Shown here: piece by piece, positions 2,339-62,773 of the stretch
How the letters are laid out: every line of letters starts with the position of its first letter
How positions within the stretch are numbered: the stretch's first letter is position 1
Virus record (IMG/VR): IMGVR_UViG_3300037882_001770
Location: 186,001 to 250,000 of that record
Direction: 5' to 3' (one strand)
DNA: 64,000 nt
Position numbers and translations under genes: made by a program
The notes under the pieces: model-generated
Told to the model about the DNA's origin: nothing
Database searches by the model: none
The model's input: only the letters and a program-made list of their open reading frames with translations

Positions 2339-3586
2339 ATGAAAAAAATAGGATTTATTGGGTTGGGTAAACTTGGCCTAGACTGCGCCGAAGTGTTTGC
2401 CGAACATTATGAAGTGCGCGGCTTTGATATTTACCCAAGAACCAGTGACCTGGTAAAAGTTTGTAGCATAGAAGAAACTGTCAATGAAAGTGAATGGATT
2501 TTTTTAGCAGTACCAACTCCTCACTGTGAAGGATACGATGGATCAGTTCCTAGCAGCCATATGGAACCCAAAGACTTTGGACGCGAAGCAGTATTAGCCG
2601 CAATTGACAGTATAAACAAACATGCAACCTCAAGCAAAAAAGTAGTGCTAATCAGCACAGTGTTGCCAGGTACTACTAGACATTATTTTGCTGGACGTCT
2701 TGATTCTGTACACAATTTTTTGTACAATCCTTACTTGATTGCTATGGGCAGTGTAAAGTGGGACATGGTCAATCCAGAAATGATCATGATCGGCACCGAA
2801 GATGGCAATCCCAATGCGCTTGCACAAGAGTTAATCGATCTATATACACCAATGATGAAAAATAGTCCAAGGTATGAAGTTGGTACTTGGGACGAGTGTG
2901 AAGCAATTAAAATTTTCTATAACACATTTATCAGTGCCAAAGTTGGTCTGGCCAATATGATTCAAGATTTTGCTATGAAGATTGGTAATATCAATGTGGA
3001 TGTGGTCACGGATGCATTGGCTCGTAGCACAATGCGTATTATGGGTCCCAAGTATATGACAGCTGGCATGGGCGATGCAGGTGCTTGCCATCCTAGAGAT
3101 AATATTGCTCTACGTTGGCTGGCACAAGAATATGACTTAGGGTACGACATGTTTGATACAATCATGCATGCTCGAGAAATTCAAGCACGTAATCTAGCTG
3201 AGTTTTTAGTAATACAAGCACAAAAAAATAACTTGCCAATAGTAATTCATGGCAAGGCTTATAAACCAGACGTGCCGTATTGTATTGGTAGTTATAGCAC
3301 CCTAATTGGACATTATGTTGAACAGGCAGGACACCGGGTGTCCTATGTTGATCCATTGGCCGACGACCAAACAAATGTAGTATCAAGTCTTGACACCCCG
3401 GCGGTAGTGTTGTTGGCACATAACCGACATGTAACCTATGGATATACTGGACAACCTCAACAAGACATTTTTTATTACGATATTAAGTCTGGCAGCGTTA
3501 TTGTTGATCCGTGGCGCTCAATTTCACAAGACACGAAAGGCATGACTGTTATACACTATGGAAACACACGTAATAACCAAATATAA
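2339..3586 (+). CDS. ugd: UDP-glucose/GDP-mannose dehydrogenase family protein
   Basis: Rossmann GLGKLG, AVPTP, STVLPGTT, catalytic Lys in EAIKIFYN, catalytic Cys in GACHPRD, AYKPD. Confidence 0.9.
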   Translation: MKKIGFIGLGKLGLDCAEVFAEHYEVRGFDIYPRTSDLVKVCSIEETVNESEWIFLAVPTPHCEGYDGSVPSSHMEPKDFGREAVLAAIDSINKHATSSKKVVLISTVLPGTTRHYFAGRLDSVHNFLYNPYLIAMGSVKWDMVNPEMIMIGTEDGNPNALAQELIDLYTPMMKNSPRYEVGTWDECEAIKIFYNTFISAKVGLANMIQDFAMKIGNINVDVVTDALARSTMRIMGPKYMTAGMGDAGACHPRDNIALRWLAQEYDLGYDMFDTIMHAREIQARNLAEFLVIQAQKNNLPIVIHGKAYKPDVPYCIGSYSTLIGHYVEQAGHRVSYVDPLADDQTNVVSSLDTPAVVLLAHNRHVTYGYTGQPQQDIFYYDIKSGSVIVDPWRSISQDTKGMTVIHYGNTRNNQI

Positions 3587-15000: not shown

Positions 15001-15597
15001 ATGCCAAATTTAGTACCCATTGTAGTAGAACAAACCAGCAAAGGCGAACGCAGTTACGATATATATAGTAGACTGCTGCGTGATCGTATTGTAATGCTAG
15101 ATACAGACGTAAACGAGCATACTGCCAGTTTGATAGTGGCTCAGTTGCTGTTTTTAGAAGCAGAAGATCCAGAGCGCGATATTATTTTTTACATCAACAG
15201 CCCAGGTGGCGTAGTCACGGCAGGTATGGCAATTTACGACACTATGAACTTTATTCGCCCGGATGTAAGCACAGTGGTCATGGGCCAGGCATGTAGCATG
15301 GGAAGTTGTTTAGCTCAGGCTGGCGCCGCAGGTAAACGATTTATTTTGCCAAATGCACGTCATATGATTCACCAACCTTCGGGCGGTGCCAGAGGACAAG
15401 CAACAGATATTCAGATTCAAGCACAAGAAATACTCAAAATGAAAAAATACTTAACAGAGATCTATGTCAAGCACAACACTGCTGGCAAAACCTTTGAGCA
15501 GTTGACCGCAGACATGGAACGCGACAACTTTATGAGTGCTGAAGAAGCAGTGGCCTATGGCTTGGCTGATCAGATTATAACTCGACGCGATGCCTAA
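15001..15597 (+). CDS. clpP: ATP-dependent Clp protease proteolytic subunit
   Basis: [46 protein letters not shown]. Confidence 0.97.
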
Positions 15598-16897
15598 TCA
15601 GCAGGTATTTTGCAACACCCCGTGGTATGAATTACATATCTATTGGGACGGTGGCTTTGGTATTTGTTGTCAAGAAAGCCACCGATTGTATAAAGATTCC
15701 ACACAGTACAACATTGCCAACATGAGCATTATGGAATGGTTTAATAGCCAACCTGTGCGAAAATTCAGAACAGACATACTGGGTGACAGTAAAATATCTG
15801 AGTGCCAGCGTTGTTATATTGAAGAACGACACGGCGGCAACAGTCGTAGATTAAAAAGTAATTTAAAAAGCGTTATCTTTACACGTCAGGCCTTTGATGA
15901 AAGTTTTAAACAAAGTCCAGGATATCCGATATTTTCAACCAACGACCAAACTCAAGGCTACACCACGACCCATCCGATTGATCTGCATGTTGACCTAGGA
16001 AACTACTGTAACTTGGCCTGTAAAATGTGCCATGCACAGGCCAGTAGCACAATTGCAAGCCAAGAAGTAAAATGGGGCATTGCCGAAAGCAAACAGTATC
16101 TTGGTACCGACTGGACCAGAAATCCGCAGGTATGGCAATCGTTTAAACAGCAGTTGTTGGAAATACCAAATTTAAAGAATATACACTTCATGGGCGGCGA
16201 AACTCTACTGACCAATCAATTTGAAGATCTAGTGGACTGGTTGACCGAACATCGACGATTTGAAGTGTGTTTTAGTTTTGTGACCAATGGTACAGTGTTT
16301 AAACCAACACTAATCGACAAACTTAAAAAGTTTCAGCGAGTGGGCATAGAAATCAGTATAGAATCTGTAGATGAACACAATGCTTATCAACGTCAGGGCA
16401 CCGATACTGCTCTGGTACTAGCCAACATCAAACAATATCAAACACACTGCAACAACACCAGCATCACCGTGGCATTACGTCCAGCACCTAGCGCATTGAC
16501 CATTGGCTACTATGTGGGATTATTGCAGTTTGCACTAGACAATCAGTTGGTGGTCAAAAGCAATCTGTGTTACGAGCCAAGATTCTTAAATGCAGAAATA
16601 TTACCTGACAAAACAAAATTGCTTTACCAGTCATATTATCAAGAATTTTTAACACAATTTGCCGATGTACAGGCCAATATCGATTACAATGCCAGCGACT
16701 TGAATAACTATCGATTAATCATCAAAGAACATGCAGAAATGTGCCTGGCCATATTGCAAACCCCGGAGCCCAACGATTATCAACATCAAATTGAATGTCT
16801 GGTCAATCACTGTAGAAAATGGGATGATATTTACGGATACGATGCACGAGTATTATATCCTGAATTAACTGAAATATTGGATCTTTATGGCTATTGA
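15590..16897 (+). CDS. radical SAM protein with N-terminal SPASM/Twitch-like domain
   Basis: [16 protein letters not shown]; N-terminal C..PW...CC...C..C. Confidence 0.9.
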
Positions 16898-18394: not shown

Positions 18395-18501
18395 AAACAA
18401 CACTCTAAACCCCGTTTTAGCGGGGTTTTTTGTGGGTTGTCCAAACGGTTGACCCAAAATGATACCTGCGCTATAATGTATGTATAGTGAAAATAAAGGA
18501 G
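18385..18501 (+). promoter_or_regulatory. palindrome + terminator + early promoter + RBS module
   Basis: TGTGG-N8-CAACA, hairpin AAACCCCG/CGGGGTTT, TTGACC 18449-N17-TATAAT 18472, AAGGAG. Confidence 0.85.
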
Positions 18502-34766: not shown

Positions 34767-34826
34767 GTTGACCAACAATATTCTTTTTAGTATAATAGCA
34801 GTATAGTAATTAATTGTGAGATTCTG

Positions 34827-38331: not shown

Positions 38332-38777
38332 TGAGTGAAATTACTTTTAAACGATTTCCTGAAAGCAAGCAAGAACAGATCAGACAGTTTGTGGCCTATG
38401 CACAGATGTGTGGCTTGTCGGGCAAGGACATTCGCAGCATCGGTGACAAGCTGGATCGGCAACGCAAGGTCAGCGAGCGGCAGGCCAACATGGAAATCGT
38501 TAAAGGCTTTGAGTGTTTAAGCATTGGGGATGATGCCAAGAAATACGATAAAAAATATCAACTCAACCAACGTTTCAAACTCAAAACTGCTAACGGCGCT
38601 TACAACTTTGTTTACAACTGGGGTGGTTATACGGTCACCAGTTTAAAAACTAAAAAAACTGTAAGCCACAAGACTGACATCCATGCTTATGAACTTCCGG
38701 TTAGAAACTATGATGAAGTCGCTCGTTATGCAACCTTGTTGGATATTGCATTTGGTAAATTGAAACTGAATTTTTAA
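38331..38777 (+). CDS. hypothetical basic protein
   Basis: TAATG coupling at both ends. Confidence 0.7.
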   Translation: MSEITFKRFPESKQEQIRQFVAYAQMCGLSGKDIRSIGDKLDRQRKVSERQANMEIVKGFECLSIGDDAKKYDKKYQLNQRFKLKTANGAYNFVYNWGGYTVTSLKTKKTVSHKTDIHAYELPVRNYDEVARYATLLDIAFGKLKLNF

Positions 38778-39925
38778 TGATTGAACAATACTATCAACAG
38801 CTATGTCAGGAGTGGGGATATACGCCCACCGCCGATGTATGCACAGGTTACGAATCGGTTATGCCTAGATTGCGAGCACTTGGCAAAGAAGCATGGAACC
38901 GAGCCGACGAAGCGGGGAAGCAATCGATTCAGGATGAAGTATTTAATATCTATCGCAGTGTGGGCGTAGTTCCTATTACCTACTACAATCTGGACGGGTG
39001 TCGTGCTCAAGTCAATGAACTAGTAACCAAGACAAAGTCAGTTAAGAATCATCAGTTAGGAGTGGGCAACAACGAAGGCTTGGCATTTGGTCGGTTTTGG
39101 TTTCCTAACATGCAAGATGCCAAATGGAACGACAACGCCACAGTGAGTATTCGGGCTAGATTTAATCACGACAGCAAACTCAAACGAGCAATCAAGTTGG
39201 CCTATGTACATCGCGACGAAGGTGAGGACACAGTAATACCCAAAAATATTCGCCGTGCATTGGAGCTGGTCAATGGTGGGACCATACAAAACTTCAAACC
39301 TATGAATGCTCGTGCTGTTTGGGAACATATCTGCCCAGTATTTCGTGGCAACGTATTAGACTTTAGTTCGGGATATGGTGGTCGTATGTTTGGAGCAATG
39401 ACTAGTAATCTACGATATCATTACACAGGATTAGATCCAAATACCAGGACATTTCAAGGACTCAATGCACTGGGTGAATTACTTACAGATCAAAATTTAG
39501 GGGCAGGTTATTCTATGCACTGTATTCCCAGTGAGGAATTTGATCCAGACCCTGGCTTCTACGATGCGGCATTCTCTAGTCCACCTTATTTTAATTTAGA
39601 AACCTACACCGATGAACCAACACAATGTATGAATCGTTATACTACATTAGACGAATGGTTTGATGGATATGTAGTTGAAACTATACACATGACTCACAAG
39701 GCATTATGTCAGGGCGGTATGTATGCTGTAAACATTGCTGACTACAAGAACGGAAAGCAAGATTTTAAGATTGTAAACCACTGGATTGAACTAGCCGAAG
39801 CGACTGGATTCAGGCACGTCGAAACAATAGATATGATACTAAATGTTCGCCCAGGAGTTGGCAACAACAAGTTGGAAAAAGCCTACAAAAGCGAAGGCAT
39901 CTATATTTTCCAAAAAAAATCATAA
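38777..39925 (+). CDS. SAM-dependent DNA amino-methyltransferase (N4-C/N6-A)
   Basis: NFKP..A; motif I VLDFSSGYGGR; Y.G.DPN; motif IV FSSPPYFNLE.Y. Confidence 0.88.
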   Translation: MIEQYYQQLCQEWGYTPTADVCTGYESVMPRLRALGKEAWNRADEAGKQSIQDEVFNIYRSVGVVPITYYNLDGCRAQVNELVTKTKSVKNHQLGVGNNEGLAFGRFWFPNMQDAKWNDNATVSIRARFNHDSKLKRAIKLAYVHRDEGEDTVIPKNIRRALELVNGGTIQNFKPMNARAVWEHICPVFRGNVLDFSSGYGGRMFGAMTSNLRYHYTGLDPNTRTFQGLNALGELLTDQNLGAGYSMHCIPSEEFDPDPGFYDAAFSSPPYFNLETYTDEPTQCMNRYTTLDEWFDGYVVETIHMTHKALCQGGMYAVNIADYKNGKQDFKIVNHWIELAEATGFRHVETIDMILNVRPGVGNNKLEKAYKSEGIYIFQKKS

Positions 39926-39943
39926 AAATATATTCGCAAGCCC

Positions 39944-39996
39944 ATAGGCACAATCTATTAAAAACTGTTGACAATAGTATTAAATAAACATATACT
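39944..39996 (+). promoter_or_regulatory. LysR/OxyR-like box plus sigma70 promoter
   Basis: ATAG-N7-CTAT 39944-39958; TTGACA 39968-N17-TATACT 39991. Confidence 0.6.
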
Positions 39997-40036
39997 ATTA
40001 ATCAGTAGTTGTAACAATATTCAAAAGGAAATCTAA

Positions 40037-40180
40037 ATGGAACAATATGTATGTGGAGTATGTGGCCACGTTCACAATGAGGCCGTCGAAGGTGTGTTTG
40101 CAGAACTTAGCGACAACTTTCTTTGCCCTGAGTGCGGGTGCTACAAAGATGAGTACGCAGTACAAGAACTAGCAGTATAA
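40037..40180 (+). CDS. rubredoxin (not in ORF track)
   Basis: MEQYVCGVCGHVHNE...F.EL.D.F.CPECG..K..Y, two CxxC motifs; AAGGA RBS. Confidence 0.9.
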   Translation: MEQYVCGVCGHVHNEAVEGVFAELSDNFLCPECGCYKDEYAVQELAV

Positions 40181-40237
40181 GGTCGACACAGTGAGTAAAT
40201 CACTGTATAATTGTTTTTTTATAAAGGAGAAGTAAAG

Positions 40238-40678
40238 ATGGCAAAATCAGTAAAAGGTACCAAAACAGAACACGCATTGAAAGATGCGTTTGCAGGTGAA
40301 AGCAAAGCCAACCGCCGTTATTTGTATTTCGCAAACATGGCTGACGTAGCAGGCGCACCAGATGTTGCGGCAGTATTCCGTTCCACCGCTGAAGGCGAAA
40401 CAGGTCATGCACACGGCCATATGGAGTACTTGATCACAGGTGGTGCAGGCGATCCTGAAACAGGTCTTCCAGCTGGTTCAGTCAAAGAAGCTTTAGAAAG
40501 TGCTATCGCAGGCGAGACACACGAGTACACCGACATGTACCCAGGCATGGCTAAGACAGCCCGCGACGAAGGCTTTGACGAAATCGCTGACTGGTTTGAG
40601 ACTTTGGCTAAGGCTGAGCGTAGCCACGCAAACAAGTTCACCAAGACTTTGGCGGCTCACTTAGAAGACATCAAGTAA
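40238..40678 (+). CDS. rbr: rubrerythrin (di-iron domain only)
   Basis: [38 protein letters not shown]. Confidence 0.93.
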
Positions 40679-40879
40679 TTGGAAACCAGAACAAGAACTC
40701 TTGTCAAGACAATGATCTACAGGTGCTGGGTCTTGCTCAGCACCTATGTGATGCTGTTGGTCACTGGTCAAAGTTTTGCTGAGGCTATTGTTCCTACTAT
40801 CATTATCAACTGTGTCTGGATGACGTCCTACTACCTGTATGACCGACTCTGGGCACACATTGCCTGGGGACGTGAATGA
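40679..40879 (+). CDS. DUF2061-like membrane protein
   Basis: ET..RTL.KT..YR; YY..DR.W..I.WG. Confidence 0.7.
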   Translation: METRTRTLVKTMIYRCWVLLSTYVMLLVTGQSFAEAIVPTIIINCVWMTSYYLYDRLWAHIAWGRE

Positions 40880-41185
40880 ATGCAAGTTGTCACCTGGTCT
40901 GATTGGCTTGAACGCCATATTCCCTACTACCAACAGCAGCAACAGCAAGACCAGTATGGCAATTATCCACCGGAAGCTGTGTTGATAATTGACCCCACAG
41001 ATCGCTATCAACGCTCAGTTCGTCATGGTTATATTGGCAGCACCTGGGAAGCTATGGACAATCTGATTGCGGCGTTAAACTATCGGTCCAAACCAATATT
41101 CTTGGATACTGACACACACCAACGCTGGTATTGGGGTTTTTGGTCACAAAACGATGCCCTGGCAGCTGTAATACGATTGTCATAA
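40880..41185 (+). CDS. hypothetical protein, related to the F..DA..L family
   Basis: C-terminus WGFWSQNDALAAVIRL. Confidence 0.6.
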   Translation: MQVVTWSDWLERHIPYYQQQQQQDQYGNYPPEAVLIIDPTDRYQRSVRHGYIGSTWEAMDNLIAALNYRSKPIFLDTDTHQRWYWGFWSQNDALAAVIRLS

Positions 41186-41200
41186 AATAACCAGTAAATA

Positions 41201-41272
41201 ACTTAACCGGACACAAGATAAGGTGATCGCTGGAGTCCGTAACCAGCACTAAAGAGCCCAGGCTCTTTTTTT
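41201..41272 (+). ncRNA. candidate small pseudoknotted RNA with terminator
   Basis: TAAATA promoter 41195; hairpin GCTGG/CCAGC whose loop GTCCG pairs with upstream CGGAC; terminator AAAGAGC/GCTCTTT+T. Confidence 0.5.
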
Positions 41273-41549: not shown

Positions 41550-42374
41550 ATGCCAGAAAAAACCTACAGATCAATTTTTATTTCGGATGTACATCTCGGT
41601 ACCCGTGACTGCAAGGCCGAAGCTCTCAACAACTTTCTCAAACACAACACCTGCGAAACCCTGTATCTTGTAGGAGACATAATTGACGCATGGAAAATAC
41701 AACAGAACAAGTGGCGATGGAAACAAAGCCACACCAATGTGATACGCAGAGTAATGGGTCATGCCAAACGTGGCACTCGAGTAATTTATGTGGCCGGCAA
41801 CCACGATGAATTTCTAAGACCCTTGATACCTTTGGGCATTGGCTTTGGCCTGATCGAAGTGGTAAATCAAGCAGAACACATAGGCGTGGATGGCCGACAC
41901 TATCTGGTCACACATGGTGATCTGTTCGACGGTATTACTAGACTGGCACCGTGGCTAGCATTTCTGGGTGACAAACTTTATGATTTTGTATTAAACTTAA
42001 ATTCACAGTTCAATGCTGTTCGTCGTAGGTTGCGCTTGGGTTATTGGAGTCTAAGCCGGTATCTCAAATACAAAGTCAAAAAAGCCGCCGATTTTTTGTT
42101 TCAGTTTGAACGTAATCTTGCTACCTACTGCAAGAAGCGTGGCTACGATGGTGTTATTTGTGGGCACATACATCATGCAGAAATCAAAGAGATAGATGGA
42201 ATCATGTACATGAATGACGGAGACTGGGTTGAGAGTATGACCGCCTTGGTTGAACATCATTCAGGAACATGGGAAATCATAACCTGGACCAAGGAGCACG
42301 ACGATGTGGATACTGATACTGTTGGCCGTGAACATAAACAATCCAAACGACGTACCCGGAAGAGTAAGCATTGA
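41550..42374 (+). CDS. LpxH/PlcP-like metallophosphoesterase
   Basis: FISDVHLG, YLVGDIID.W, GNHDE, HGD.FD, ICGHIH, Y.NDGDWVES.TALVE. Confidence 0.9.
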   Translation: MPEKTYRSIFISDVHLGTRDCKAEALNNFLKHNTCETLYLVGDIIDAWKIQQNKWRWKQSHTNVIRRVMGHAKRGTRVIYVAGNHDEFLRPLIPLGIGFGLIEVVNQAEHIGVDGRHYLVTHGDLFDGITRLAPWLAFLGDKLYDFVLNLNSQFNAVRRRLRLGYWSLSRYLKYKVKKAADFLFQFERNLATYCKKRGYDGVICGHIHHAEIKEIDGIMYMNDGDWVESMTALVEHHSGTWEIITWTKEHDDVDTDTVGREHKQSKRRTRKSKH

Positions 42375-42477
42375 GTTTGCCACCGAATCTGAATGTGTGC
42401 GGGCTCAGTCCACTGTGCAGTCGTGGTTGAAATTTGATTCTTTTCGAGTGATTACCAAATGTCAAAAACAATCTTAG
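42304..42477 (+). CDS. 57-aa exported protein with Cys pair (not in ORF track)
   Basis: AAGGAG RBS at about 42291; MWILILLAV...F.TE.EC..A......C. Confidence 0.6.
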   Translation: MWILILLAVNINNPNDVPGRVSIEFATESECVRAQSTVQSWLKFDSFRVITKCQKQS

Positions 42478-43466
42478 TAATAACCGACAATGTTCCAGAT
42501 CAAATCAACGGTGTGGTCACAACTTTCAAAAACCTGGAAAGTCACGCTGTTGACGCTGGGCATTGTGTTGTTTATCTTGATCCCTCTCAGTTTCCTCATT
42601 GTGCTTGCCCTGGGTATCCTGAAGTTCAACTCTGCTGGCCACACGGCATTAGCACGAAGATTAAGGCGATACAGCCGTCGTATATTCACATTGCCACCGA
42701 AGGCCCAGTAGGCCTATTTGCTCGCTGGTGGTGTGAGCGAAATCACATTCCCTACAATACCAGTTATCACACCGACTTTGCCAAGTTTCTAAAGAAAATG
42801 TATCGTGTGCCTGAGTCCGTGACCTGGTGGTATCTGCGTTGGTTTCACAAGAACAGTCACAGGGTGCTGGTTACAACAGAAAGCATACGGCAAGACTTGT
42901 TGACTCGTGGATTCGCCAATCTGCGTGTGTGGACTCGAGGAGTAGACCGAACCATATTTAACAGCACTCATCGTGGTGAAACTGTGGCAGGCGGTCCGGT
43001 ACTGTTAAGTGTTGGTCGGGTAAGTGTTGAAAAAGGCCTAGATGATTTTTGCCGATTAGACATTCCAGGCGCCACCAAAATTGTAGTTGGGGACGGTCCA
43101 TATAGACAAGAATTACAACGCCGGTATCCTGATATCGTTTTTGTGGGAAGTAAACAAGGAACCGACTTGGCTCGGTATTATGCTCAAGCCGATGTGTTTG
43201 TTTTTGCCAGTCGTGCTGACACTTTTGGTGTGGTCAACATTGAAGCATTGGCCTGCGGAACCCCGGTTGCGGCCTATCCTGTTGCAGGACCCAAGGATAT
43301 TGTTGAGCCTGGACTTACCGGATTCTTAAACAACAATTTACAATTAGCAGTGCAACAGTGCTTGACTCTGGATCGTGCGGCGGTAGAAACAGCCAGCCTA
43401 CAATGGACCTGGGCAGAATGTTGGCGTATATTTGAGGACAATCTAGTAGACTGTTCTGTTGCCTAA
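42459..43466 (+). CDS. GT4 glycosyltransferase (Agt/MgtA-like lipid glycosyltransferase)
   Basis: TD...QINGVV.T, HIATEGP.G, SYHT.F, W.RGVD, VGRVS.EK, DTFG.V..EALACGTPVAAYP. Confidence 0.92.
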   Translation: MSKTILVITDNVPDQINGVVTTFKNLESHAVDAGHCVVYLDPSQFPHCACPGYPEVQLCWPHGISTKIKAIQPSYIHIATEGPVGLFARWWCERNHIPYNTSYHTDFAKFLKKMYRVPESVTWWYLRWFHKNSHRVLVTTESIRQDLLTRGFANLRVWTRGVDRTIFNSTHRGETVAGGPVLLSVGRVSVEKGLDDFCRLDIPGATKIVVGDGPYRQELQRRYPDIVFVGSKQGTDLARYYAQADVFVFASRADTFGVVNIEALACGTPVAAYPVAGPKDIVEPGLTGFLNNNLQLAVQQCLTLDRAAVETASLQWTWAECWRIFEDNLVDCSVA

Positions 43467-43574
43467 AAACAACACATTTAAAGCCCGATAAAACGGGCTT
43501 TTTTCTGGGTTTACCAAAAGGTTGACCAAAAATACCAGATCGGCTATAATAGTTGTATAGTTAATAAAAAGGAG
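43457..43574 (+). promoter_or_regulatory. palindrome + terminator + early promoter + RBS module
   Basis: TGTTG-N8-CAACA; AAAGCCCG/CGGGCTTT hairpin; TTGACC 43522-N17-TATAAT 43545; AGGAG. Confidence 0.88.
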
Positions 43575-43911
43575 CCGAAGATGAGCAAACTTACAGCATA
43601 TACTTTAGAGATTTACAAAAAAGACCGCAGAATCAAAGCAGGCCAACGCCTGGTTGAAAAGAAGGACTTCTGCCCAGTTACCCTGGATTACATTCAAACC
43701 GTGGTATCGGACAAGATTGCACAGGGATTTCTAGTGCAGGTTCACGAAACCTTTGTTACCAAGACTAACCTAATGGGTGGTAAGGAGTTTACCGAGCGTT
43801 ATGATACTCCACATTTTTGCTCGCCTGCTAGCGAATCATATTGGAGCATGTAAAACGGTTGACCAAAATTTACCGATTTGCTATAATAGTTGTATAGTTA
43901 ATAAAAAGGAG
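43543..43911 (+). repeat. 32-bp direct repeat covering -10 box to RBS, flanking one gene
   Basis: GCTATAATAGTTGTATAGTTAATAAAAAGGAG at 43543-43574 and 43880-43911. Confidence 0.9.
43581..43853 (+). CDS. hypothetical early protein
   Basis: YK.DRR.K.G.R; NLM.G.EF.E..DTP..CSP.SE.YWSM. Confidence 0.8.
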   Translation: MSKLTAYTLEIYKKDRRIKAGQRLVEKKDFCPVTLDYIQTVVSDKIAQGFLVQVHETFVTKTNLMGGKEFTERYDTPHFCSPASESYWSM

Positions 43912-49470: not shown

Positions 49471-50604
49471 ATGAGTTCTTGGTATTGTGCTTTACCTTTT
49501 AAACATGTGTTTGTGGACAGTACAGGACTTAGTCCTTGTTGCAATACCGTCGGACAATTTGGGCTTGACGTCAGTATAGACGAATACAAATCACATCCTA
49601 AGTTACTAGAATTACAAAAACAATTTCTTGATGGGCGCACTCCTGCTGCATGCTCTGTTTGCTTGCACCAAGAAAAAATTCAAAACAAAAGTATGAGAAT
49701 AGACAGTAATATTGACTACAATCATCGGGTGTTTGATTCTACCGAGTTTGATTTTATACACCTTAGTCAAAGTAACTTGTGTAATTTCAAATGCCGCAGT
49801 TGTAGTCCAAGATACAGCCACGGAATAGTTCAAGAACACAAAAAATATCCCGAATTGTTTGCGGACGCACCTCAACAAAAATTCGTCGAAGTCAATCCTG
49901 ACAATTATAAATGGATTATTAAAAATTTATCAAGTATTAAAAGACTTTTAATAACCGGCGGAGAGCCCACAGTAATGCCAGAAATAAGACATTTGTTTGA
50001 ATTTTTGTTGCAAACACCGCGGCCGCAACCACAACCGTATATTATGATGACAACCAATTGTAGCTGGACTGATAATTTTTGGTATCAAGCAATTGACGGT
50101 ATGTCTAATTTGCATATCACAGCTAGTGTAGATGCAGTAGGAGATGCTGCGCAACTAATAAGACACGGTACTGTTTGGAATCAGGTAGAGCGCAACGTGA
50201 AGTGGTTAGCCCAGCATGCCTCGAGTTTTGATATCAATACGGTAATTAGCAATTTAAATATAAACCATCTTTATGATTTACTTCAATTCTGCAGACAAGA
50301 ACAAATAGCCTCCAAAGTAGAAAATGGAGGGAAACAGGGAGATTTGGGACTACGGCATCAATTTACTATAGCTAACGGTGTCAATGAGATTACCTGTTTT
50401 CCGGATGATCTAAAAACAAAAACACTAAAACATTTGGATCAGTGCCTTGCATTGGATCTAGATCCAGACCAACTGAAATTGATCAAGGGGTTAATTGTAA
50501 CTGTTCAAAATAGTACATACAATCATCAAAAATGGCAAAGTATTGTAGAATATCAAACCAAACTTGATCAAATTCGTGGTGAAAACCATTTGAAACTACT
50601 CTAA
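49471..50604 (+). CDS. radical SAM protein with N-terminal Twitch-like domain
   Basis: C.LPF..PCC..C..C; CNFKCRSC; TGGEP; TN. Confidence 0.9.
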   Translation: MSSWYCALPFKHVFVDSTGLSPCCNTVGQFGLDVSIDEYKSHPKLLELQKQFLDGRTPAACSVCLHQEKIQNKSMRIDSNIDYNHRVFDSTEFDFIHLSQSNLCNFKCRSCSPRYSHGIVQEHKKYPELFADAPQQKFVEVNPDNYKWIIKNLSSIKRLLITGGEPTVMPEIRHLFEFLLQTPRPQPQPYIMMTTNCSWTDNFWYQAIDGMSNLHITASVDAVGDAAQLIRHGTVWNQVERNVKWLAQHASSFDINTVISNLNINHLYDLLQFCRQEQIASKVENGGKQGDLGLRHQFTIANGVNEITCFPDDLKTKTLKHLDQCLALDLDPDQLKLIKGLIVTVQNSTYNHQKWQSIVEYQTKLDQIRGENHLKLL

Positions 50605-58031: not shown

Positions 58032-58253
58032 ATGGAACATCCGTTAATCACAGGTCTGGACTTGCTAACTCCAGACCAACTGTTAGAAAAAATATCCGAA
58101 CTTAATCGAAAGTTAGCATTTGCCTATCGATCTGGCAATGTAAATTTATGCAATCAGATTCGTATGGCCATCGATAGCCACCAATCCATCTACCAAGAAA
58201 AAACTCGTCGCAATCCCGGAACAGCATTTGACGATGTTATTGACATATCATGA
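58032..58253 (+). CDS. hypothetical protein
   Basis: promoter TTGACA 57997 / TACAAT 58020. Confidence 0.7.
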   Translation: MEHPLITGLDLLTPDQLLEKISELNRKLAFAYRSGNVNLCNQIRMAIDSHQSIYQEKTRRNPGTAFDDVIDIS

Positions 58254-58858
58254 ACGTTAGAATACACCACACTTTGCCATTTACAGCCGGAGTTTACTAC
58301 AATGGCCGGATGCAGATGAACACCTATAGTTTAAAACTATGGATGCTGACCAACAGCATGGATGCCAATGATCATAATATAAGTTTTGAGCGCATCAAAC
58401 ATTTTATCTACTCTGAAATCGAAAGCACAATTTTTATCAATAGTGAACACCGCGAACAGTGCCAACTGTATGCCAATGCAGGTCTTAATATTACAACTAT
58501 TCCAGGAGAACCAGTCGACCAATTGATTGGAATCATGCTATACTGTAAACTAAATGCTATTACTGAAACTCGCATGATAATCGTGGAAACAGAACTCAGC
58601 AGTCACCTTGGCGATGGCATGGTGTATATACATAGCGACGATGAAAATATACAAGGCGTTGAGGTACCAGACTGGTGGCTCACCCCCGATCTTGTTCATT
58701 GTGACAGTGCGTTGATTGACGTTGATAATGTGGTTCCTATGCACTTGACCAGTGCCTGGCGAGATTTTGATTTAAACTGGGTTGAAACCTCTGACAAGAA
58801 AACAAAAAACGATAACACTGTAGTATTTGCAGACTTTGGTAGAGATGATACAAAATAA
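58250..58858 (+). CDS. hypothetical protein
   Basis: 202-aa ORF coupled to the DnaE fragment. Confidence 0.75.
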   Translation: MNVRIHHTLPFTAGVYYNGRMQMNTYSLKLWMLTNSMDANDHNISFERIKHFIYSEIESTIFINSEHREQCQLYANAGLNITTIPGEPVDQLIGIMLYCKLNAITETRMIIVETELSSHLGDGMVYIHSDDENIQGVEVPDWWLTPDLVHCDSALIDVDNVVPMHLTSAWRDFDLNWVETSDKKTKNDNTVVFADFGRDDTK

Positions 58859-60663: not shown

Positions 60664-61580
60664 AAGAACTTTGGGTAGAAAAATATAGACCTAATACTAT
60701 AGACGGTTACGTATTTCGCGACACCGCTCAGCGGGAACAAATTGAAAGCTGGATCAAGGATCGAGCAATTCCACATTTGATATTCAGTGGCAATGCTGGC
60801 ATTGGAAAAACAACACTGGCTAAGATTTTGATCAATCAGCTCGAAATAAACGAATATGATCTATTGGAAATCAATGCCAGTCGAACCAACAGTGTTGACG
60901 ATGTTAGAGTAAAGATTCAGACCTTTGTAGAAACAATGCCCTTTGGCGACTTCAAAATTGTGTTGTTAGACGAAGCAGATTATCTAAGCCCTAATGCTCA
61001 AGCCGCACTTCGAGGAGTTATGGAAACCTATGCGCATACAGCCAGATTTATTTTAACCTGTAACTACCCAACCAAGATTATTCCGGCACTACACAGTCGC
61101 TGTCAGGGCTTTCACATTGAACGTGTTGACATGACTGAATTTACTGCTCGAGCAGCTACAGTGCTGGTTGAAGAATCAATTGAATTTGACCTAGATACCC
61201 TAGATACCTATGTCAAGGCTGCTTATCCAGACCTGCGCAAATGTTTAAATACCTTGCAAATGAATAGTTCGTCGGGTAAACTGTTGGTCCCCAGTGGCGA
61301 TGCCGGCAGTACAGGCGACTGGAAACTGTCGGCAGTTGAATTGTTTAAAGAAGGGCGGATCAATGACGCTCGCAAACTGATGTGTAGTCAAGCTCGGCCC
61401 GAGGAAATGGAAGATGTATTCCGTTGGATGTACGACAACTTGTCGTTATGGAGCAAGGACACCGAAAAGCAAGATCAAGCAATTATTATCATTCGTAACG
61501 GCTTGGTGAATGTGCCAATGGTGGCGGATCAGGAGATCAATCTATCAGCAACTATCACGGAACTTTGCCAGTTGCAATGA
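60660..61580 (+). CDS. sliding clamp loader subunit (RFC/gp44-like AAA+)
   Basis: LWVEKYRP, GNAGIGKTT, INAS, LLDEAD, SRC, DLRK. Confidence 0.95.
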   Translation: MKELWVEKYRPNTIDGYVFRDTAQREQIESWIKDRAIPHLIFSGNAGIGKTTLAKILINQLEINEYDLLEINASRTNSVDDVRVKIQTFVETMPFGDFKIVLLDEADYLSPNAQAALRGVMETYAHTARFILTCNYPTKIIPALHSRCQGFHIERVDMTEFTARAATVLVEESIEFDLDTLDTYVKAAYPDLRKCLNTLQMNSSSGKLLVPSGDAGSTGDWKLSAVELFKEGRINDARKLMCSQARPEEMEDVFRWMYDNLSLWSKDTEKQDQAIIIIRNGLVNVPMVADQEINLSATITELCQLQ

Positions 61581-62773
61581 AAAAGGTAATACCGATACAG
61601 ACAGATCGTGATTATTATTGTTCAAATAAATTTACTTTTTTAAAAATTGATTTTGAAAAACAAACCACGTATAATTGTCATGCAGCCACACCCCATCCAA
61701 TTGATTTTGTCTGGTTAGAAAATAATCCTGGGCAATTGTTTAATACGCCAATCAACATGTCTGAACGTGAGTTGATGTTGGATAATCAACGTAACCCTAG
61801 TTGTGAACAAAACTGCTATCCAGCCGAAGATCGTGGCCAGGTCAGTACTCGAATGTTACAGTCTACTCCGGATCGTCAATACACTGATGTTCTAACTCAC
61901 CCCAAGCTGGTGGACTTTACACTGTTTAGTGAATGCAACCTTACCTGTAGTTATTGTTGCAAAGAATACAGCAGTGCCTGGCGCAATGACTTGTTAAAAA
62001 ACGGATCGTATGATCTGCCAAATTACGCCAATCAAAATCGCATGAAATTGTTGCCTATAGATATTGTGTCTGGTAAGGTAAGTCAAAAAGAAAAAGCAAA
62101 TTTGCCTAAGATAAAATTGCTATTGGAGCAAGTTTACAACAGTCGAGAACATCTTGAAATTTTAACCATCACCGGCGGGGAGCCATTTCTAAACAATCTG
62201 CTACCAGAGATATTAGAAAAATTTAAAACAGTTCCTAGAATTGATTTGTTTACTGGTCTTGGAGTTAACACCGAACGATTTAAAAAAATATTATCTGTGG
62301 TATCACAATACAAAAATATCAACTTGTGCATCAGTGCCGAATCTACAGAAAAAAATTACGAGTTTAACCGCTACGGCATGACTTGGCAAAATTTTCAAGA
62401 ACGATTAAAAATTATTCAAGATCTTGGAATCAAATTTGAATTCCACTGCACTATCTCTAATCTTACAGTGTTAGGGTTCAAGGACTTTTATAAACTCTAC
62501 AAAGATGTCAAACTACATATAGACTTTGTGCATCACCCCGATTTTATGTCAGCCAGCAACTTAGATCCTGCATCCAAACAACAAGTCATAGATGATTTAT
62601 TGCCATATCAAGACGATGTAAAAATCCAACAGATATTACAAACCGTAATCAGCGATCATGTAAATAACGATCATAGGGTAACTATGGCCACGTGGCTAGA
62701 GCAGTTTGCTAGTCGTCGACAACTTGATTTAAATTTATACCCAAAAACTTTTTTAGATTGGCTAAAACAATGA
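61577..62773 (+). CDS. radical SAM protein with N-terminal Cys cluster
   Basis: C..KF...CH...SCEQNC; CNLTCSYC; TGGEP. Confidence 0.9.
   Translation: MKKVIPIQTDRDYYCSNKFTFLKIDFEKQTTYNCHAATPHPIDFVWLENNPGQLFNTPINMSERELMLDNQRNPSCEQNCYPAEDRGQVSTRMLQSTPDRQYTDVLTHPKLVDFTLFSECNLTCSYCCKEYSSAWRNDLLKNGSYDLPNYANQNRMKLLPIDIVSGKVSQKEKANLPKIKLLLEQVYNSREHLEILTITGGEPFLNNLLPEILEKFKTVPRIDLFTGLGVNTERFKKILSVVSQYKNINLCISAESTEKNYEFNRYGMTWQNFQERLKIIQDLGIKFEFHCTISNLTVLGFKDFYKLYKDVKLHIDFVHHPDFMSASNLDPASKQQVIDDLLPYQDDVKIQQILQTVISDHVNNDHRVTMATWLEQFASRRQLDLNLYPKTFLDWLKQ

What the first reader, a model, noticed from the sequence alone, without database searches (positions are those of the whole stretch)
39944..40879. Rubredoxin-rubrerythrin unit with an OxyR-like box
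Seen: ATAG-gcacaat-CTAT ends 9 bp before the -35 of the promoter for a 47-aa rubredoxin missed by the ORF track; rubrerythrin lacking its own rubredoxin domain follows, with a second promoter (TCGACA-N17-TATAAT) containing the dyad ACAGTGA-N5-TCACTGT (40188-40206). Known: ATAG-N7-CTAT is the OxyR repeat unit, and rubredoxin reduces rubrerythrin peroxidases. Inference: phage peroxide defence wired to a host redox regulator. Only half of a full OxyR site is present.
Basis: partly seen in the sequence, partly recalled or inferred. Interest (0 to 1): 0.6.

Follow-up and report, generated by a model that had tools for sequence, protein, structure and literature searches.

The report
Phage peroxide operon with OxyR box
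A 317-kb freshwater phage carries a small operon for destroying hydrogen peroxide (a mini-rubredoxin plus a rubrerythrin), and in front of it sits a short DNA palindrome, conserved across many unrelated phage copies and matching the binding site of the bacterial peroxide sensor OxyR, so the phage probably lets its host's stress sensor control its own antioxidant genes.

Summary
The 47-aa ORF is a short rubredoxin. The 146-aa ORF is an "aerobic-type" rubrerythrin with all seven diiron ligands and no rubredoxin domain.

Within this genome the ATAG-N7-CTAT box is not significant: 10 copies against 3-8 expected.
- Across 81 viral loci, exact boxes are 113-fold enriched in the 300 nt upstream of the rubredoxin/rubrerythrin unit.
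- There are 13 different N7 spacers, in at least 7 apparent groups of the Rbr tree.
- Half of 80 bacterial orthologues, with Polynucleobacter closest at 88% aa identity, carry the four-element OxyR-type site (at least 12/16; two are 16/16) next to the -35.
- Polynucleobacter has an OxyR orthologue with Cys199 and Cys208, within about 3 kb of rbr and about 4 kb of ahpC.

The rubredoxin partner is phage-specific: 26/80 viral loci have it against 0/80 bacterial loci. It replaces the bacterial DUF3501 and Fe-S oxidoreductase neighbours.

The second promoter is plausible. Its dyad is unique in the genome, not conserved, and unsupported as an operator.

OxyR binding, the transcription start and peroxide induction remain untested. 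I rate this a new variant of a known kind, of moderate interest.

The parts
39920..39936 (+). A-rich LysR-type (T-N11-A) unit. It contains the conserved element AAAAATATATT (39924-39934). In the canonical OxyR register it reads ATAA-N7-TTCG (39922-39936).
   Evidence: The element AAAAATAnnwT is 24-fold enriched upstream of viral rd/rbr units. It is of the same type as the promoter-proximal unit ATTG-N7-CAAT of bacterial rbr sites and the ATAC-AAAAATA-yGAT unit of Polynucleobacter rbr promoters. Its spacing to the box varies among phages.
39944..39958 (.). Perfect palindromic OxyR-type half unit ATAG-gcacaat-CTAT, proposed as the operator.
   Evidence: Read. Exact boxes are 113-fold enriched upstream of the unit in 81 viral loci, with 13 distinct 15-mers. 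It matches the ChIP-derived P. aeruginosa OxyR half unit ATAGATTNAATCTAT at 11 of 14 defined positions (PMC3378865).
39968..39996 (+). Promoter P1, TTGACA-N17-TATACT (sigma-70 type, 11/12). The predicted start is near 40003.
   Evidence: Relatives L047, L063, L003 and L043 share this promoter, including its spacer. The start site was not mapped.
39984..39998 (.). Near-box ATAA-N7-CTAT (7/8) overlapping the -10 of P1, 40 bp downstream of the perfect box.
   Evidence: Found in the one-mismatch scan. It recurs in L047, L063, L043 and L003. Because those loci are alignable, shared ancestry cannot be excluded.
40037..40180 (+). Short rubredoxin, 47 aa, with Cys6, Cys9, Cys30 and Cys33.
   Evidence: Pfam PF00301 scores 26.2 bits against a cut-off of 23. 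PDB 6RXN/6NW0 match at E 7e-7. The gene is linked to rbr in 26 of 80 viral loci, upstream in 22 and downstream in 4.
40183..40211 (+). Candidate internal promoter P2, TCGACA-N17-TATAAT (11/12).
   Evidence: L002 has a different promoter-like site (TTGCTT-N17-TACAAT) at the same place, as read. In the L012 group rd and rbr are translationally coupled and no such promoter exists.
40188..40206 (+). Dyad ACAGTGA-N5-TCACTGT in the P2 spacer. Its function is unknown; a weak RNA hairpin is possible.
   Evidence: It is the only copy in 317 kb. The centroid hairpin folds at -8.9 kcal/mol; the 71-nt region that was folded has z -1.27 against shuffles. The T-run starts 7 nt after the stem. The dyad is not conserved in relatives.
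40238..40678 (+). Aerobic-type rubrerythrin (erythrin/sulerythrin-like), 146 aa, without a rubredoxin domain.
   Evidence: PF02915 scores 90 bits. The B. pseudomallei Rbr structures 4DI0/9ONM match at E 7.5e-65 and sulerythrin 1J30 at E 5e-52. The ligands E21, E54, H57, E93, E96, E127 and H130 were read from the sequence against that alignment.
40679..40879 (+). Small membrane protein, 66 aa, TTG start, resembling DUF2061.
   Evidence: PF09834 scores 20.9 bits, below its cut-off of 23.1. The ORF is 80-91% identical over all 66 aa in six syntenic viral loci, directly after rbr.
40880..41185 (+). Conserved phage-only protein, 101 aa, with the invariant motif DTHQxWxWxFW.
   Evidence: It follows rbr, or rbr plus DUF2061, in 13 viral loci. 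Alignment A1 has 69% mean column identity. The model has pLDDT 87. The best fold matches are only ACT/ferredoxin-like, with Z at most 5.7. Atlas neighbours are 96-100% viral.
41251..41268 (+). Intrinsic-terminator-like hairpin followed by a T-run; the likely end of the unit.
   Evidence: Consensus scan: 7-bp stem, 4-nt loop, then TTTTTATTG.

Best explanation
The window lies in a 317-kb jumbo phage from freshwater. Positions 39920-41268 form one early transcription unit read by the host's sigma-70 RNA polymerase: rubredoxin, rubrerythrin, a DUF2061-like membrane protein and a conserved 101-aa protein, ending at a terminator.

The enzymatic core would work as follows. The 47-aa rubredoxin carries electrons to the diiron site of an aerobic-type rubrerythrin, which reduces H2O2 to water. 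The phage encodes no Pyr_redox_2-family reductase, so the electrons would have to come from a host reductase.

In bacteria this rubrerythrin type is linked to DUF3501 and a CCG-domain Fe-S oxidoreductase. The phages have swapped these for a self-contained one-gene electron carrier.

Upstream of the promoter sits an operator of the OxyR type. It has a perfect ATAG-N7-CTAT unit centred about 52 bp before the predicted start, flanked by a degenerate A-rich unit. The host's peroxide sensor OxyR would bind there and tune transcription to the peroxide load of the infected cell.

Shown: the genes, their families, the motif, its conservation, and the full sites in bacterial orthologues. Inferred: the host (a Polynucleobacter-like member of Burkholderiales), OxyR as the binding protein, the direction of regulation, electron flow from rubredoxin to rubrerythrin, and the start site.
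For: Genes
- Family assignments.
- Rubredoxin is linked to rbr in 26 of 80 viral loci, in both gene orders, and in 0 of 80 bacterial loci.
- The phage genome has no DUF3501 and no Pyr_redox_2. Polynucleobacter L082 has DUF3501 and a CCG oxidoreductase divergent from rbr, with GST and AhpC downstream, as described in PMC5114695.

Box in phages
- There are 22 exact boxes in 24.7 kb of upstream regions, against 4 in 507 kb of flanks.
- 17 of 81 loci have an exact box and 42 of 81 have a box with at most one mismatch. There are 13 different 15-mers, with invariant arms and variable spacers.
- By my reading, these fall in at least 7 groups of the Rbr tree.

Full sites in bacteria
- Scores of at least 12/16 against ATAG-N7-CTAT-N7-ATAG-N7-CTAT occur at 41 positions in 21 kb upstream, against 7 in 453 kb elsewhere (117-fold).
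- 40 of 80 loci reach at least 12/16. L108 and L111 score 16/16, with the site abutting a weak -35.

Host side
- Rbr is up to 88% identical in Polynucleobacter, and those copies are intermingled with the phage clade.
- In P. bastaniensis, ahpC, rbr and an OxyR orthologue lie within about 5 kb.
- That orthologue scores 298 bits to P. aeruginosa OxyR 4X6G. It has GHC..GVC at positions 199 and 208 and a nearly identical recognition helix.
- The P. aeruginosa ChIP half unit is ATAGATTNAATCTAT (PMC3378865).
- Polynucleobacter Rbr protein rises strongly after UV (PMC7522526). B. pseudomallei rbr is induced by H2O2 (PMC4175613).

Other points
- The phage genome has no LysR HTH domain.
- In 10 of the 12 architectures examined, the distance from the box to the -10 is 12, 22 or 32-33 bp, that is steps of one helical turn.
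Against: - No binding, footprint, start site or induction data exist. The metatranscriptome contigs that were laid cover only conserved rbr coding stretches of relatives.
- In the window only one unit is perfect. The distal unit in the canonical register matches 4 of 8 positions, which is about chance.
- P1 is near consensus, so it may need no activator.
- The box sits 10 bp further from the promoter than in bacterial orthologues.
- Spacing between the A-rich unit and the box varies among phages (13, 24, 31-32 bp), which is not what a rigid tetramer site predicts.
- Polynucleobacter ahpC promoters use ATCT/mGAT arms rather than ATAG/CTAT.
- The exact pattern is not enriched genome-wide in Polynucleobacter (17 copies against 33 for the control pattern).
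- Many viral loci (39 of 81) have no box within one mismatch. Some have no promoter of their own.
- The host is inferred.
Confidence: 0.6

Rival explanations
1. The box is a real operator but is read by something other than OxyR. Candidates are a second host LysR-type regulator (Polynucleobacter has an OxyR-like paralogue that lies divergent from a rubredoxin gene) or a phage-encoded DNA-binding protein shared by these phages.
For: - A single 15-bp dyad suits any dimeric regulator.
- The spacing to the second conserved element varies.
- G001 encodes a second OxyR-like LysR protein (213 bits to NF008361). Its gene starts about 180 bp from a divergent canonical rubredoxin gene.
- Host ahpC sites use different arms.
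- The 101-aa co-conserved protein has no assigned function.
Against: - The arms are exactly those of the experimentally defined OxyR unit.
- Bacterial orthologues show the four-element, 22-bp-period architecture specific to OxyR.
- No LysR HTH is encoded by the phage.
- The box travels with rbr through viral contigs of widely differing length and flanking gene content. That fits a host factor better than a phage one.
Confidence: 0.2
2. The box is a passenger. It was transferred together with the host gene's promoter region and persists without a regulatory role in this phage. Here the near-consensus P1, and P2, drive constitutive early expression.
For: - P1 matches 11/12, and P2 gives rbr its own promoter.
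- The box lies one helical turn further upstream than in bacteria.
- Several viral lineages have lost the box or carry decayed versions. L004 keeps only the right half, and L005, L007 and L010 have no promoter of their own.
Against: - The arms stay intact while the 7-nt spacer and the flanks turn over, giving 13 different 15-mers.
- The box is kept at helical-turn phasing in front of at least three different promoter arrangements.
- 113-fold enrichment is hard to reconcile with neutral decay in fast-evolving phage intergenic DNA.
Confidence: 0.15
3. The dyad at 40188-40206 is the functionally important element. It could be an operator for a repressor controlling P2, or a terminator or attenuator that uncouples rubredoxin from rubrerythrin.
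For: It is a perfect 7+7 dyad placed exactly in the spacer of an 11/12 promoter. The terminator scan lists it. L002 has a different hairpin at the equivalent position, as read.
Against: - It is the only copy in the genome and has no half-site family.
- It is not conserved in any relative.
- The folding energy of the region is ordinary (z -1.27).
- The T-run is 7 nt away from the stem.
Confidence: 0.1

Closest known systems
OxyR operators of Proteobacteria: E. coli and P. aeruginosa katG, ahpC and dps, with four ATAG elements spaced by heptanucleotides (PMC3378865)
   Same: The arms are identical (ATAG-N7-CTAT), the spacer is A+T-rich, and the T-N11-A signature is present. The site lies upstream of a sigma-70 promoter of a peroxide-detoxifying gene. 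Orthologous bacterial rbr genes carry the full site.
   Different: In the window only one of the two 15-bp units is good (12/16 overall). It ends 9 bp before the -35 rather than abutting it. It sits in a phage genome that encodes no OxyR.
Phage DNA already known to be read by host OxyR: the Pf1/Pf4 prophage region of P. aeruginosa (PMC3378865, PMC12395586) and lambda pM-pR (PMC2903704). From my own knowledge, also Mu mom and P22-type gtr phase variation.
   Same: A host peroxide sensor binds phage DNA and changes phage gene expression.
   Different: Those sites control lysogeny, DNA modification or O-antigen genes. Here the proposed target is an antioxidant enzyme cassette in a lytic-type jumbo phage. 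The site is conserved across many uncultured phages, but no binding data exist.
Auxiliary metabolic genes of cyanophages wired to host regulators, such as pho boxes before pstS/phoA and NtcA sites (from my own knowledge, not checked here)
   Same: A host-derived metabolic gene in a phage keeps or acquires the operator of the host stress regulon, so its expression follows the host's physiological state.
   Different: A different regulon (peroxide rather than phosphate or nitrogen), a different host group and a different enzyme.
Aerobic-type rubrerythrin: B. pseudomallei Rbr (4DI0/9ONM), sulerythrin (1J30); Cardenas 2016 (PMC5114695)
   Same: A four-helix diiron protein of about 140 aa without a rubredoxin domain. 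It matches BpRbr at E 7.5e-65, and all ligands are present.
   Different: Bacterial genes are linked to DUF3501 and an Fe-S oxidoreductase. The phage gene is linked to a free mini-rubredoxin, a DUF2061-like protein and a phage-only 101-aa protein.
Classical rubredoxin/rubrerythrin NADH peroxidase of anaerobes (Desulfovibrio, Pyrococcus)
   Same: A rubredoxin-type FeS4 centre is expected to feed electrons to the diiron site, and the rubredoxin and rubrerythrin genes are adjacent.
   Different: There the rubredoxin centre is usually fused to rubrerythrin. Here it is a separate 47-aa protein paired with the lineage that had lost the domain.

Membership tests
Rubredoxin (PF00301) | Two Cys knuckles, CxxCG and CPxCG, about 20-30 residues apart in a protein of about 45-55 aa | tested here: met
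   Cys6/Cys9 lie in CGVCG and Cys30/Cys33 in CPECG. The profile scores 26.2 bits against a cut-off of 23. The ORF aligns end to end with the 45-aa rubredoxin 6RXN.
Rubredoxin (PF00301) | Binds one Fe and is redox-active | not testable with these tools
   Needs the purified protein, with UV-vis or EPR spectroscopy.
Aerobic-type rubrerythrin (erythrin/sulerythrin group) | Four-helix bundle with the diiron ligands E, ExxH, ExxE and ExxH | tested here: met
   E21, E54-x-x-H57, E93-x-x-E96 and E127-x-x-H130 were read against the alignment to 4DI0/9ONM. PF02915 scores 90 bits.
Aerobic-type rubrerythrin (erythrin/sulerythrin group) | No fused rubredoxin domain | tested here: met
   The protein is 146 aa and its profile match covers residues 14-137. 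No Cys knuckle is present.
Aerobic-type rubrerythrin (erythrin/sulerythrin group) | Co-localised with DUF3501 and an Fe-S oxidoreductase (PMC5114695) | tested here: not met
   There is no DUF3501 in the phage genome, and it is absent from the window's neighbours. The pair is present next to rbr in Polynucleobacter L082. This is a context feature, not a defining property of the protein.
Aerobic-type rubrerythrin (erythrin/sulerythrin group) | Peroxidase activity | not testable with these tools
   Needs an enzyme assay.
OxyR operator | 15-bp dyad unit ATAG-N7-CTAT with the T-N11-A signature | tested here: met
   Positions 39944-39958 match 8 of 8 arm positions. They match 11 of 14 defined positions of the P. 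aeruginosa ChIP consensus.
OxyR operator | Four ATAG-type elements at 11-bp spacing, that is two units 22 bp apart | tested here: inconclusive
   The window scores 12/16 (ATAA-N7-TTCG-N7-ATAG-N7-CTAT, 39922-39958). The distal unit, at 4 of 8, is about chance level. Bacterial orthologues score at least 12/16 in 40 of 80 loci and 16/16 in two.
OxyR operator | Placed directly upstream of, or overlapping, the -35 of a peroxide-response gene | tested here: inconclusive
   In the window there is a 9-bp gap to the -35. In L002, L028, L057 and in bacteria the unit abuts the -35. In L009, L030 and L037 it overlaps the -35.
OxyR operator | Conserved in front of orthologous genes | tested here: met
   The enrichment is 113-fold in viral loci and 117-fold for the four-element site in bacterial loci.
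OxyR operator | Bound by OxyR, with expression dependent on H2O2 and oxyR | not testable with these tools
   Needs EMSA or footprinting and reporter assays. The candidate host genus does have an OxyR orthologue with Cys199 and Cys208.
Sigma-70 promoter (P1, P2) | -35 and -10 hexamers with a 17-bp spacer, in front of a gene | tested here: met
   Both score 11/12. Genome-wide, the + strand has 40 such sites against about 7 expected.
Sigma-70 promoter (P1, P2) | A transcript 5' end 6-8 nt after the -10 | not testable with these tools
   The RNA runs are available only as contigs, and none covers the promoter region.
Intrinsic terminator (dyad 40188-40206) | G+C-rich stem immediately followed by a U-run | tested here: not met
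   Only 3 of the 7 stem pairs are G-C. The T-run begins 7 nt after the stem. The hairpin folds at -8.9 kcal/mol and the region is not unusual against shuffles.
DUF2061 (PF09834) | Profile match above the gathering score | tested here: not met
   The score is 20.9 bits against a cut-off of 23.1 (E 5e-4), although the match covers the full 52-position profile. I call it DUF2061-like.

The most novel reading that the evidence does not exclude
A large, cosmopolitan group of freshwater phages carries a portable, peroxide-sensing antioxidant module in which two things are new.

1. The phages plug directly into the host OxyR regulon through a conserved operator, so a lytic virus would sense the oxidative state of the cell it infects.
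2. They pair the rubredoxin-less aerobic-type rubrerythrin with a free 47-aa rubredoxin. This points to rubredoxin-type carriers as a workable electron donor for an enzyme class whose physiological reductant is still unknown, and gives a minimal two-protein system in which to test that.
Probability: 0.4. Interest if true: 0.65.

Novelty: new variant of a known kind. Interest (0 to 1): 0.55.

Why it matters
Sunlit, humic freshwaters generate H2O2 continuously, and hosts such as Polynucleobacter strongly raise rubrerythrin after UV exposure (PMC7522526).

If the reading is right, a widespread class of phages does more than carry an antioxidant gene. It keeps the host's peroxide-sensing switch in front of that gene. 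That would add OxyR to the short list of host regulons (PhoB, NtcA, LexA) known or proposed to gate phage auxiliary genes, and it can be tested directly with a gel shift and a reporter.

The phage-specific replacement of DUF3501 and the Fe-S oxidoreductase by a 47-aa rubredoxin also suggests a simple experiment on an open biochemical question: what reduces aerobic-type rubrerythrins? The authors of the B. pseudomallei structures could only speculate about the partner (bioRxiv 10.1101/2025.06.01.657255).

The same window encodes three radical-SAM proteins. Their oxygen-labile clusters give the phage a plausible reason of its own to keep peroxide low.

Tried and rejected
- Chance occurrence: rejected only after comparison with other loci. 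Within the genome alone the box is not enriched.
- Box as a general phage promoter element: rejected. None of the other roughly 40 strong promoters has it.
- Phage-encoded LysR regulator: none found. The record is only 89% complete.
- oxyR immediately adjacent to rbr in bacteria: not seen among the neighbours checked in the 6.4-kb loci L082, L084, L100 and L108. In P. bastaniensis, however, oxyR lies within about 3 kb of rbr.
- Genome-wide count of the exact pattern in two candidate host genomes: uninformative (17 and 13 copies against 33 and 19 for the control pattern). The 15-mer alone is not diagnostic.
- Dyad regulon: no other copy and no half-site family.
- Homologue search for the rubredoxin: only 4 clusters. 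That search sees only proteins 0.55-1.75 times the query length, so it says nothing about fused rubredoxin domains. Classical fused rubrerythrins do exist in other Polynucleobacter genomes.
It was not run, so there is no evidence either way.
- Expression: one read-laying run on 1601 bases. The metatranscriptome contigs match only conserved rbr coding parts at 88-95% identity, plus two short perfect pieces. Nothing covers the rubredoxin or the promoters, so there is no information on the start site.
- Function of the 101-aa protein: no Pfam or PHROG family. The model is confident, but fold matches are only generic ACT/ferredoxin-like (Foldseek E at least 0.16; VIA Z at most 5.7).
- No alternative genetic code was needed or used.
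Full report
**What is in the sequence**

The window is bases 186001-250000 of a 317,493-bp viral record estimated to be 89% complete.
- the palindrome ATAG-gcacaat-CTAT at 39944-39958;
- nine bases, then TTGACA-N17-TATACT at 39968-39996;
- a 47-codon ORF at 40037-40180;
- TCGACA-N17-TATAAT at 40183-40211, with the dyad ACAGTGA-N5-TCACTGT at 40188-40206 in its spacer;
- a 146-codon ORF at 40238-40678, behind AAGGAG.

Three further parts complete the unit:
- a 66-codon DUF2061-like membrane protein at 40679-40879 (20.9 bits, just under the Pfam cut-off);
- a 101-codon ORF at 40880-41185;
- a terminator-like hairpin with a T-run at 41251-41268.

The unit is therefore larger than the reported interval.

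**The proteins**

The 47-aa ORF is a genuine short rubredoxin. It has CGVCG and CPECG knuckles, passes the Pfam rubredoxin threshold, and aligns over its whole length with the 45-aa rubredoxin 6RXN/6NW0.

The 146-aa protein is an aerobic-type rubrerythrin. It matches the B. pseudomallei Rbr structures 4DI0/9ONM at E 7.5e-65 and sulerythrin at E 5e-52. All seven diiron ligands are present and there is no rubredoxin domain.

Cardenas et al. (PMC5114695) showed that this lineage is normally linked to DUF3501 and a GlpC-like Fe-S oxidoreductase. The B. pseudomallei structural study could only hypothesise that operon neighbours replace the missing rubredoxin. I confirmed that arrangement in Polynucleobacter: DUF3501 and a CCG-domain protein lie divergent from rbr, with GST and AhpC downstream. 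The phage has no DUF3501.

The free rubredoxin shows the opposite distribution:
- It accompanies rbr in 26 of the 80 best viral loci, upstream in 22 and downstream in 4. Linkage in both gene orders argues for a functional tie.
- It accompanies rbr in none of the 80 best bacterial loci.

The phage encodes no Pyr_redox_2-family reductase, so reducing power would have to come from the host.

**Is the box more than chance?**

Inside this genome it is not. There are ten ATAG-N7-CTAT copies against 3-8 expected, and only this one sits at a promoter.

A scan of viral contigs found 341 loci encoding close relatives of the rubrerythrin; the 80 best are 83-97% identical. In the 300 nt upstream of the rubredoxin/rubrerythrin unit:
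- Exact boxes occur 22 times in 24.7 kb, against 4 times in the remaining 507 kb. That is a 113-fold excess.
- 17 of 81 loci have an exact box and 42 of 81 have one within a single mismatch. About 11 would be expected from the flank density.
- There are 13 different exact 15-mers. The arms are invariant, while every spacer position varies.
- By my reading the boxes fall in at least seven groups of the Rbr tree, in front of clearly different promoter arrangements.

This is the signature of a protein-binding dyad under selection, although the loci are not phylogenetically independent.

**Whose site is it?**

The closest bacterial rubrerythrins belong to Polynucleobacter and other Burkholderiales (up to 88% identity). 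In a tree, one Polynucleobacter group is intermingled with the phage sequences and separated from the main proteobacterial clade.

I scored all positions against the four-element OxyR pattern ATAG-N7-CTAT-N7-ATAG-N7-CTAT:
- Bacterial rbr upstream regions reach at least 12/16 at 41 positions in 21 kb, against 7 in 453 kb elsewhere (117-fold).
- Half of the loci reach at least 12/16, and two are perfect at 16/16.
- The promoter-proximal unit typically reads ATTG-N7-CAAT and abuts a weak -35.

The P. aeruginosa ChIP-chip study defines the OxyR half unit as ATAGATTNAATCTAT. It lists a dps site that differs from the window's box at only two positions, and also a site in the Pf1 prophage (PMC3378865).

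In Polynucleobacter bastaniensis, ahpC, rbr and a LysR-type gene lie within about 5 kb. That protein is an OxyR orthologue: it scores 298 bits to P. aeruginosa OxyR 4X6G, has Cys199 and Cys208, and its recognition helix is nearly identical.

The phage genome has no LysR DNA-binding domain. Host Rbr protein rises strongly after UV in P. asymbioticus, and B. pseudomallei rbr is induced by H2O2. Together these results make OxyR the best candidate reader of the box, but nothing here shows binding.

**Architecture and how it may work**

A second conserved element, AAAAATAnnwT, lies upstream of the box in most phage loci and is 24-fold enriched there. In the window it occupies 39924-39934. It is of the same type as two bacterial units: the proximal ATTG-N7-CAAT unit, and the ATAC-AAAAATA-yGAT unit that abuts the -35 in Polynucleobacter rbr promoters.

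In the canonical register the window reads ATAA-N7-TTCG-N7-ATAG-N7-CTAT, or 12/16.

Spacing between the two elements varies among phages (13, 24, 31-32 bp). I cannot explain that with a single rigid binding mode.

In 10 of the 12 architectures examined, the distance from the box to the best -10 is 12, 22 or 32-33 bp. These are steps of one helical turn, which is what one expects if the bound protein has to face RNA polymerase.
- At 22 bp the arrangement equals that of the bacterial promoters.
- The window belongs to the 32-bp class and has a near-consensus -35.

The window also has a 7/8 near-box overlapping the -10, at 39984-39998. Whether OxyR would activate, repress when reduced, or do both cannot be decided from sequence.

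P1 and P2 belong to a population of about 40 strong sigma-70-type promoters on the + strand, against about 7 expected. This implies transcription by host polymerase, which is a precondition for control by a host activator.

**The second promoter and the dyad**

P2 is plausible. L002 also has a promoter-like site between the two genes, whereas in the L012 group the genes are translationally coupled with no such site.

The dyad itself is unique in the genome and absent from all relatives. Its hairpin folds at only -8.9 kcal/mol and the folded region is ordinary against shuffles. Its T-run is displaced from the stem. I treat it as unexplained and probably incidental.

**Context**

Syntenic relatives (L002, L003, L028, L043, L044, L047, L057) share the order [rubredoxin]-rubrerythrin-DUF2061-orf101 ... 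LpxH-like phosphoesterase-glycosyltransferase.

The 101-aa protein is conserved (alignment A1), found mainly in viruses and confidently modelled. Its fold matches are only generic.

Public runs holding parts of the stretch are freshwater, lake and wastewater metagenomes. The RNA contigs laid on it cover only conserved rbr coding segments.

**Comparison and novelty**

Host OxyR acting on phage DNA has precedents: Pf4, lambda, and from my own knowledge Mu mom and P22 gtr. Phage auxiliary genes that keep host regulon operators are also a known idea (pho boxes and NtcA sites in cyanophages, again from my own knowledge). I found no paper describing a rubrerythrin auxiliary gene with an OxyR site, or the pairing of a mini-rubredoxin with aerobic-type rubrerythrin.

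I therefore classify this as a new variant of a known kind.

**Limits**

- The host is inferred.
- The viral loci are related, so the enrichment ratios overstate the number of independent events.
- Only the best 80 loci of each collection were examined.
- The complex prediction could not be run.

Noticed in passing
L090, L113, L116, L117, L128, L135, L138, L139, L142, L144, L148, L153 (50-125 nt upstream of rbr): Twelve of 80 bacterial rbr loci, mostly Gammaproteobacteria, carry a 15-bp palindrome TTAGA-N5-TCTAA just downstream of a promoter. It looks like the alphaproteobacterial Irr/ICE box. It occurs nowhere else in 453 kb of these loci. Most of these loci lack an exact ATAG-N7-CTAT box, although L090 scores 12/16 on the four-element site. 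The same gene therefore seems to have been captured by a different regulator in that group.
   Followed up: partly
window 18449-18490, 34768-34810, 43522-43565, 43859-43900 (and five more in the genome): A family of near-identical promoter and leader cassettes, TTGACC-N17-TATAAT-N3-5-GTATAGT...AAGGAG, has nine copies on the + strand and none on the - strand. They precede small genes and probably form the phage's main early-promoter class. The role of the conserved GTATAGT after the -10 is unknown.
   Followed up: partly
window 15590-16897, 49471-50604, 61565-62773; also 2339-3586, 41550-42374, 42459-43466: The window encodes three radical-SAM-domain proteins, a UDP-glucose dehydrogenase, an LpxH-like metallophosphoesterase and a GT4 glycosyltransferase. 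Oxygen- and peroxide-labile Fe-S enzymes in the same phage could be what the peroxide module protects.
   Followed up: no
L002, L028, L057 (start of rubredoxin); L030 (start of rbr): A second exact box, ATAGGAGnnnACTAT followed by G, overlaps the Shine-Dalgarno sequence and the start codon. It lies 53-55 bp downstream of the first box. It may be a coincidence of GGAG plus ATG, or a real second operator.
   Followed up: no
window 40880-41185; alignment A1: A conserved 101-aa protein, found mainly in viruses, has the invariant motif DTHQxWxWxFW. It is always placed directly after rbr or after the DUF2061-like gene (13 loci). The model is confident (pLDDT 87) with a ferredoxin/ACT-like topology, but there is no significant structural or family match.
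   Followed up: yes
G001 (Polynucleobacter bastaniensis) contig C2, 466718-467924: A canonical rubredoxin gene lies divergent from a second OxyR-like LysR regulator, about 180 bp apart. This is a possible host rubredoxin/LysR divergon and an alternative candidate reader of the box.
   Followed up: no
L223-L252 (Polynucleobacter ahpC upstream regions): ahpC promoters in the genus share a tandem LysR-type site, ATCT-N7-mGAT-N7-ATCA-N7-TCAT, directly followed by TAGACA. The phage L012 group's rubredoxin promoter contains the same CATTAGACAAA junction.
   Followed up: partly
window 38777-39925: The upstream 382-aa ORF has an SPPY motif and weak matches to phage DNA methyltransferase families (phrog_12517 at 2.7e-12; phrog_498 at 0.003). 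It is 85% identical in L044 and L046. It is probably an N6/N4 DNA methyltransferase. Its stop codon lies inside the A-rich unit.
   Followed up: no
window 58326-58340: The only other exact ATAG-N7-CTAT in the window lies inside the ORF at 58250-58858, with no promoter nearby. It is most likely chance.
   Followed up: yes
L218-L222 (other Polynucleobacter genomes): Some Polynucleobacter genomes lack a detected close aerobic-type rbr and instead have a rubrerythrin of about 190 aa, 43-48% identical, with a fused C-terminal rubredoxin-like segment. Two genomes, G050 and G060, carry both kinds. Both solutions therefore coexist in the candidate host genus.
   Followed up: no
window 40294-40671 in runs X15-X18: Freshwater metatranscriptome assemblies contain very many contigs, 865 in one run, that match conserved parts of this rubrerythrin at 88-99% identity. 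That suggests rubrerythrins of this clade are transcribed in lakes; which organisms or phages they come from was not resolved.
   Followed up: partly
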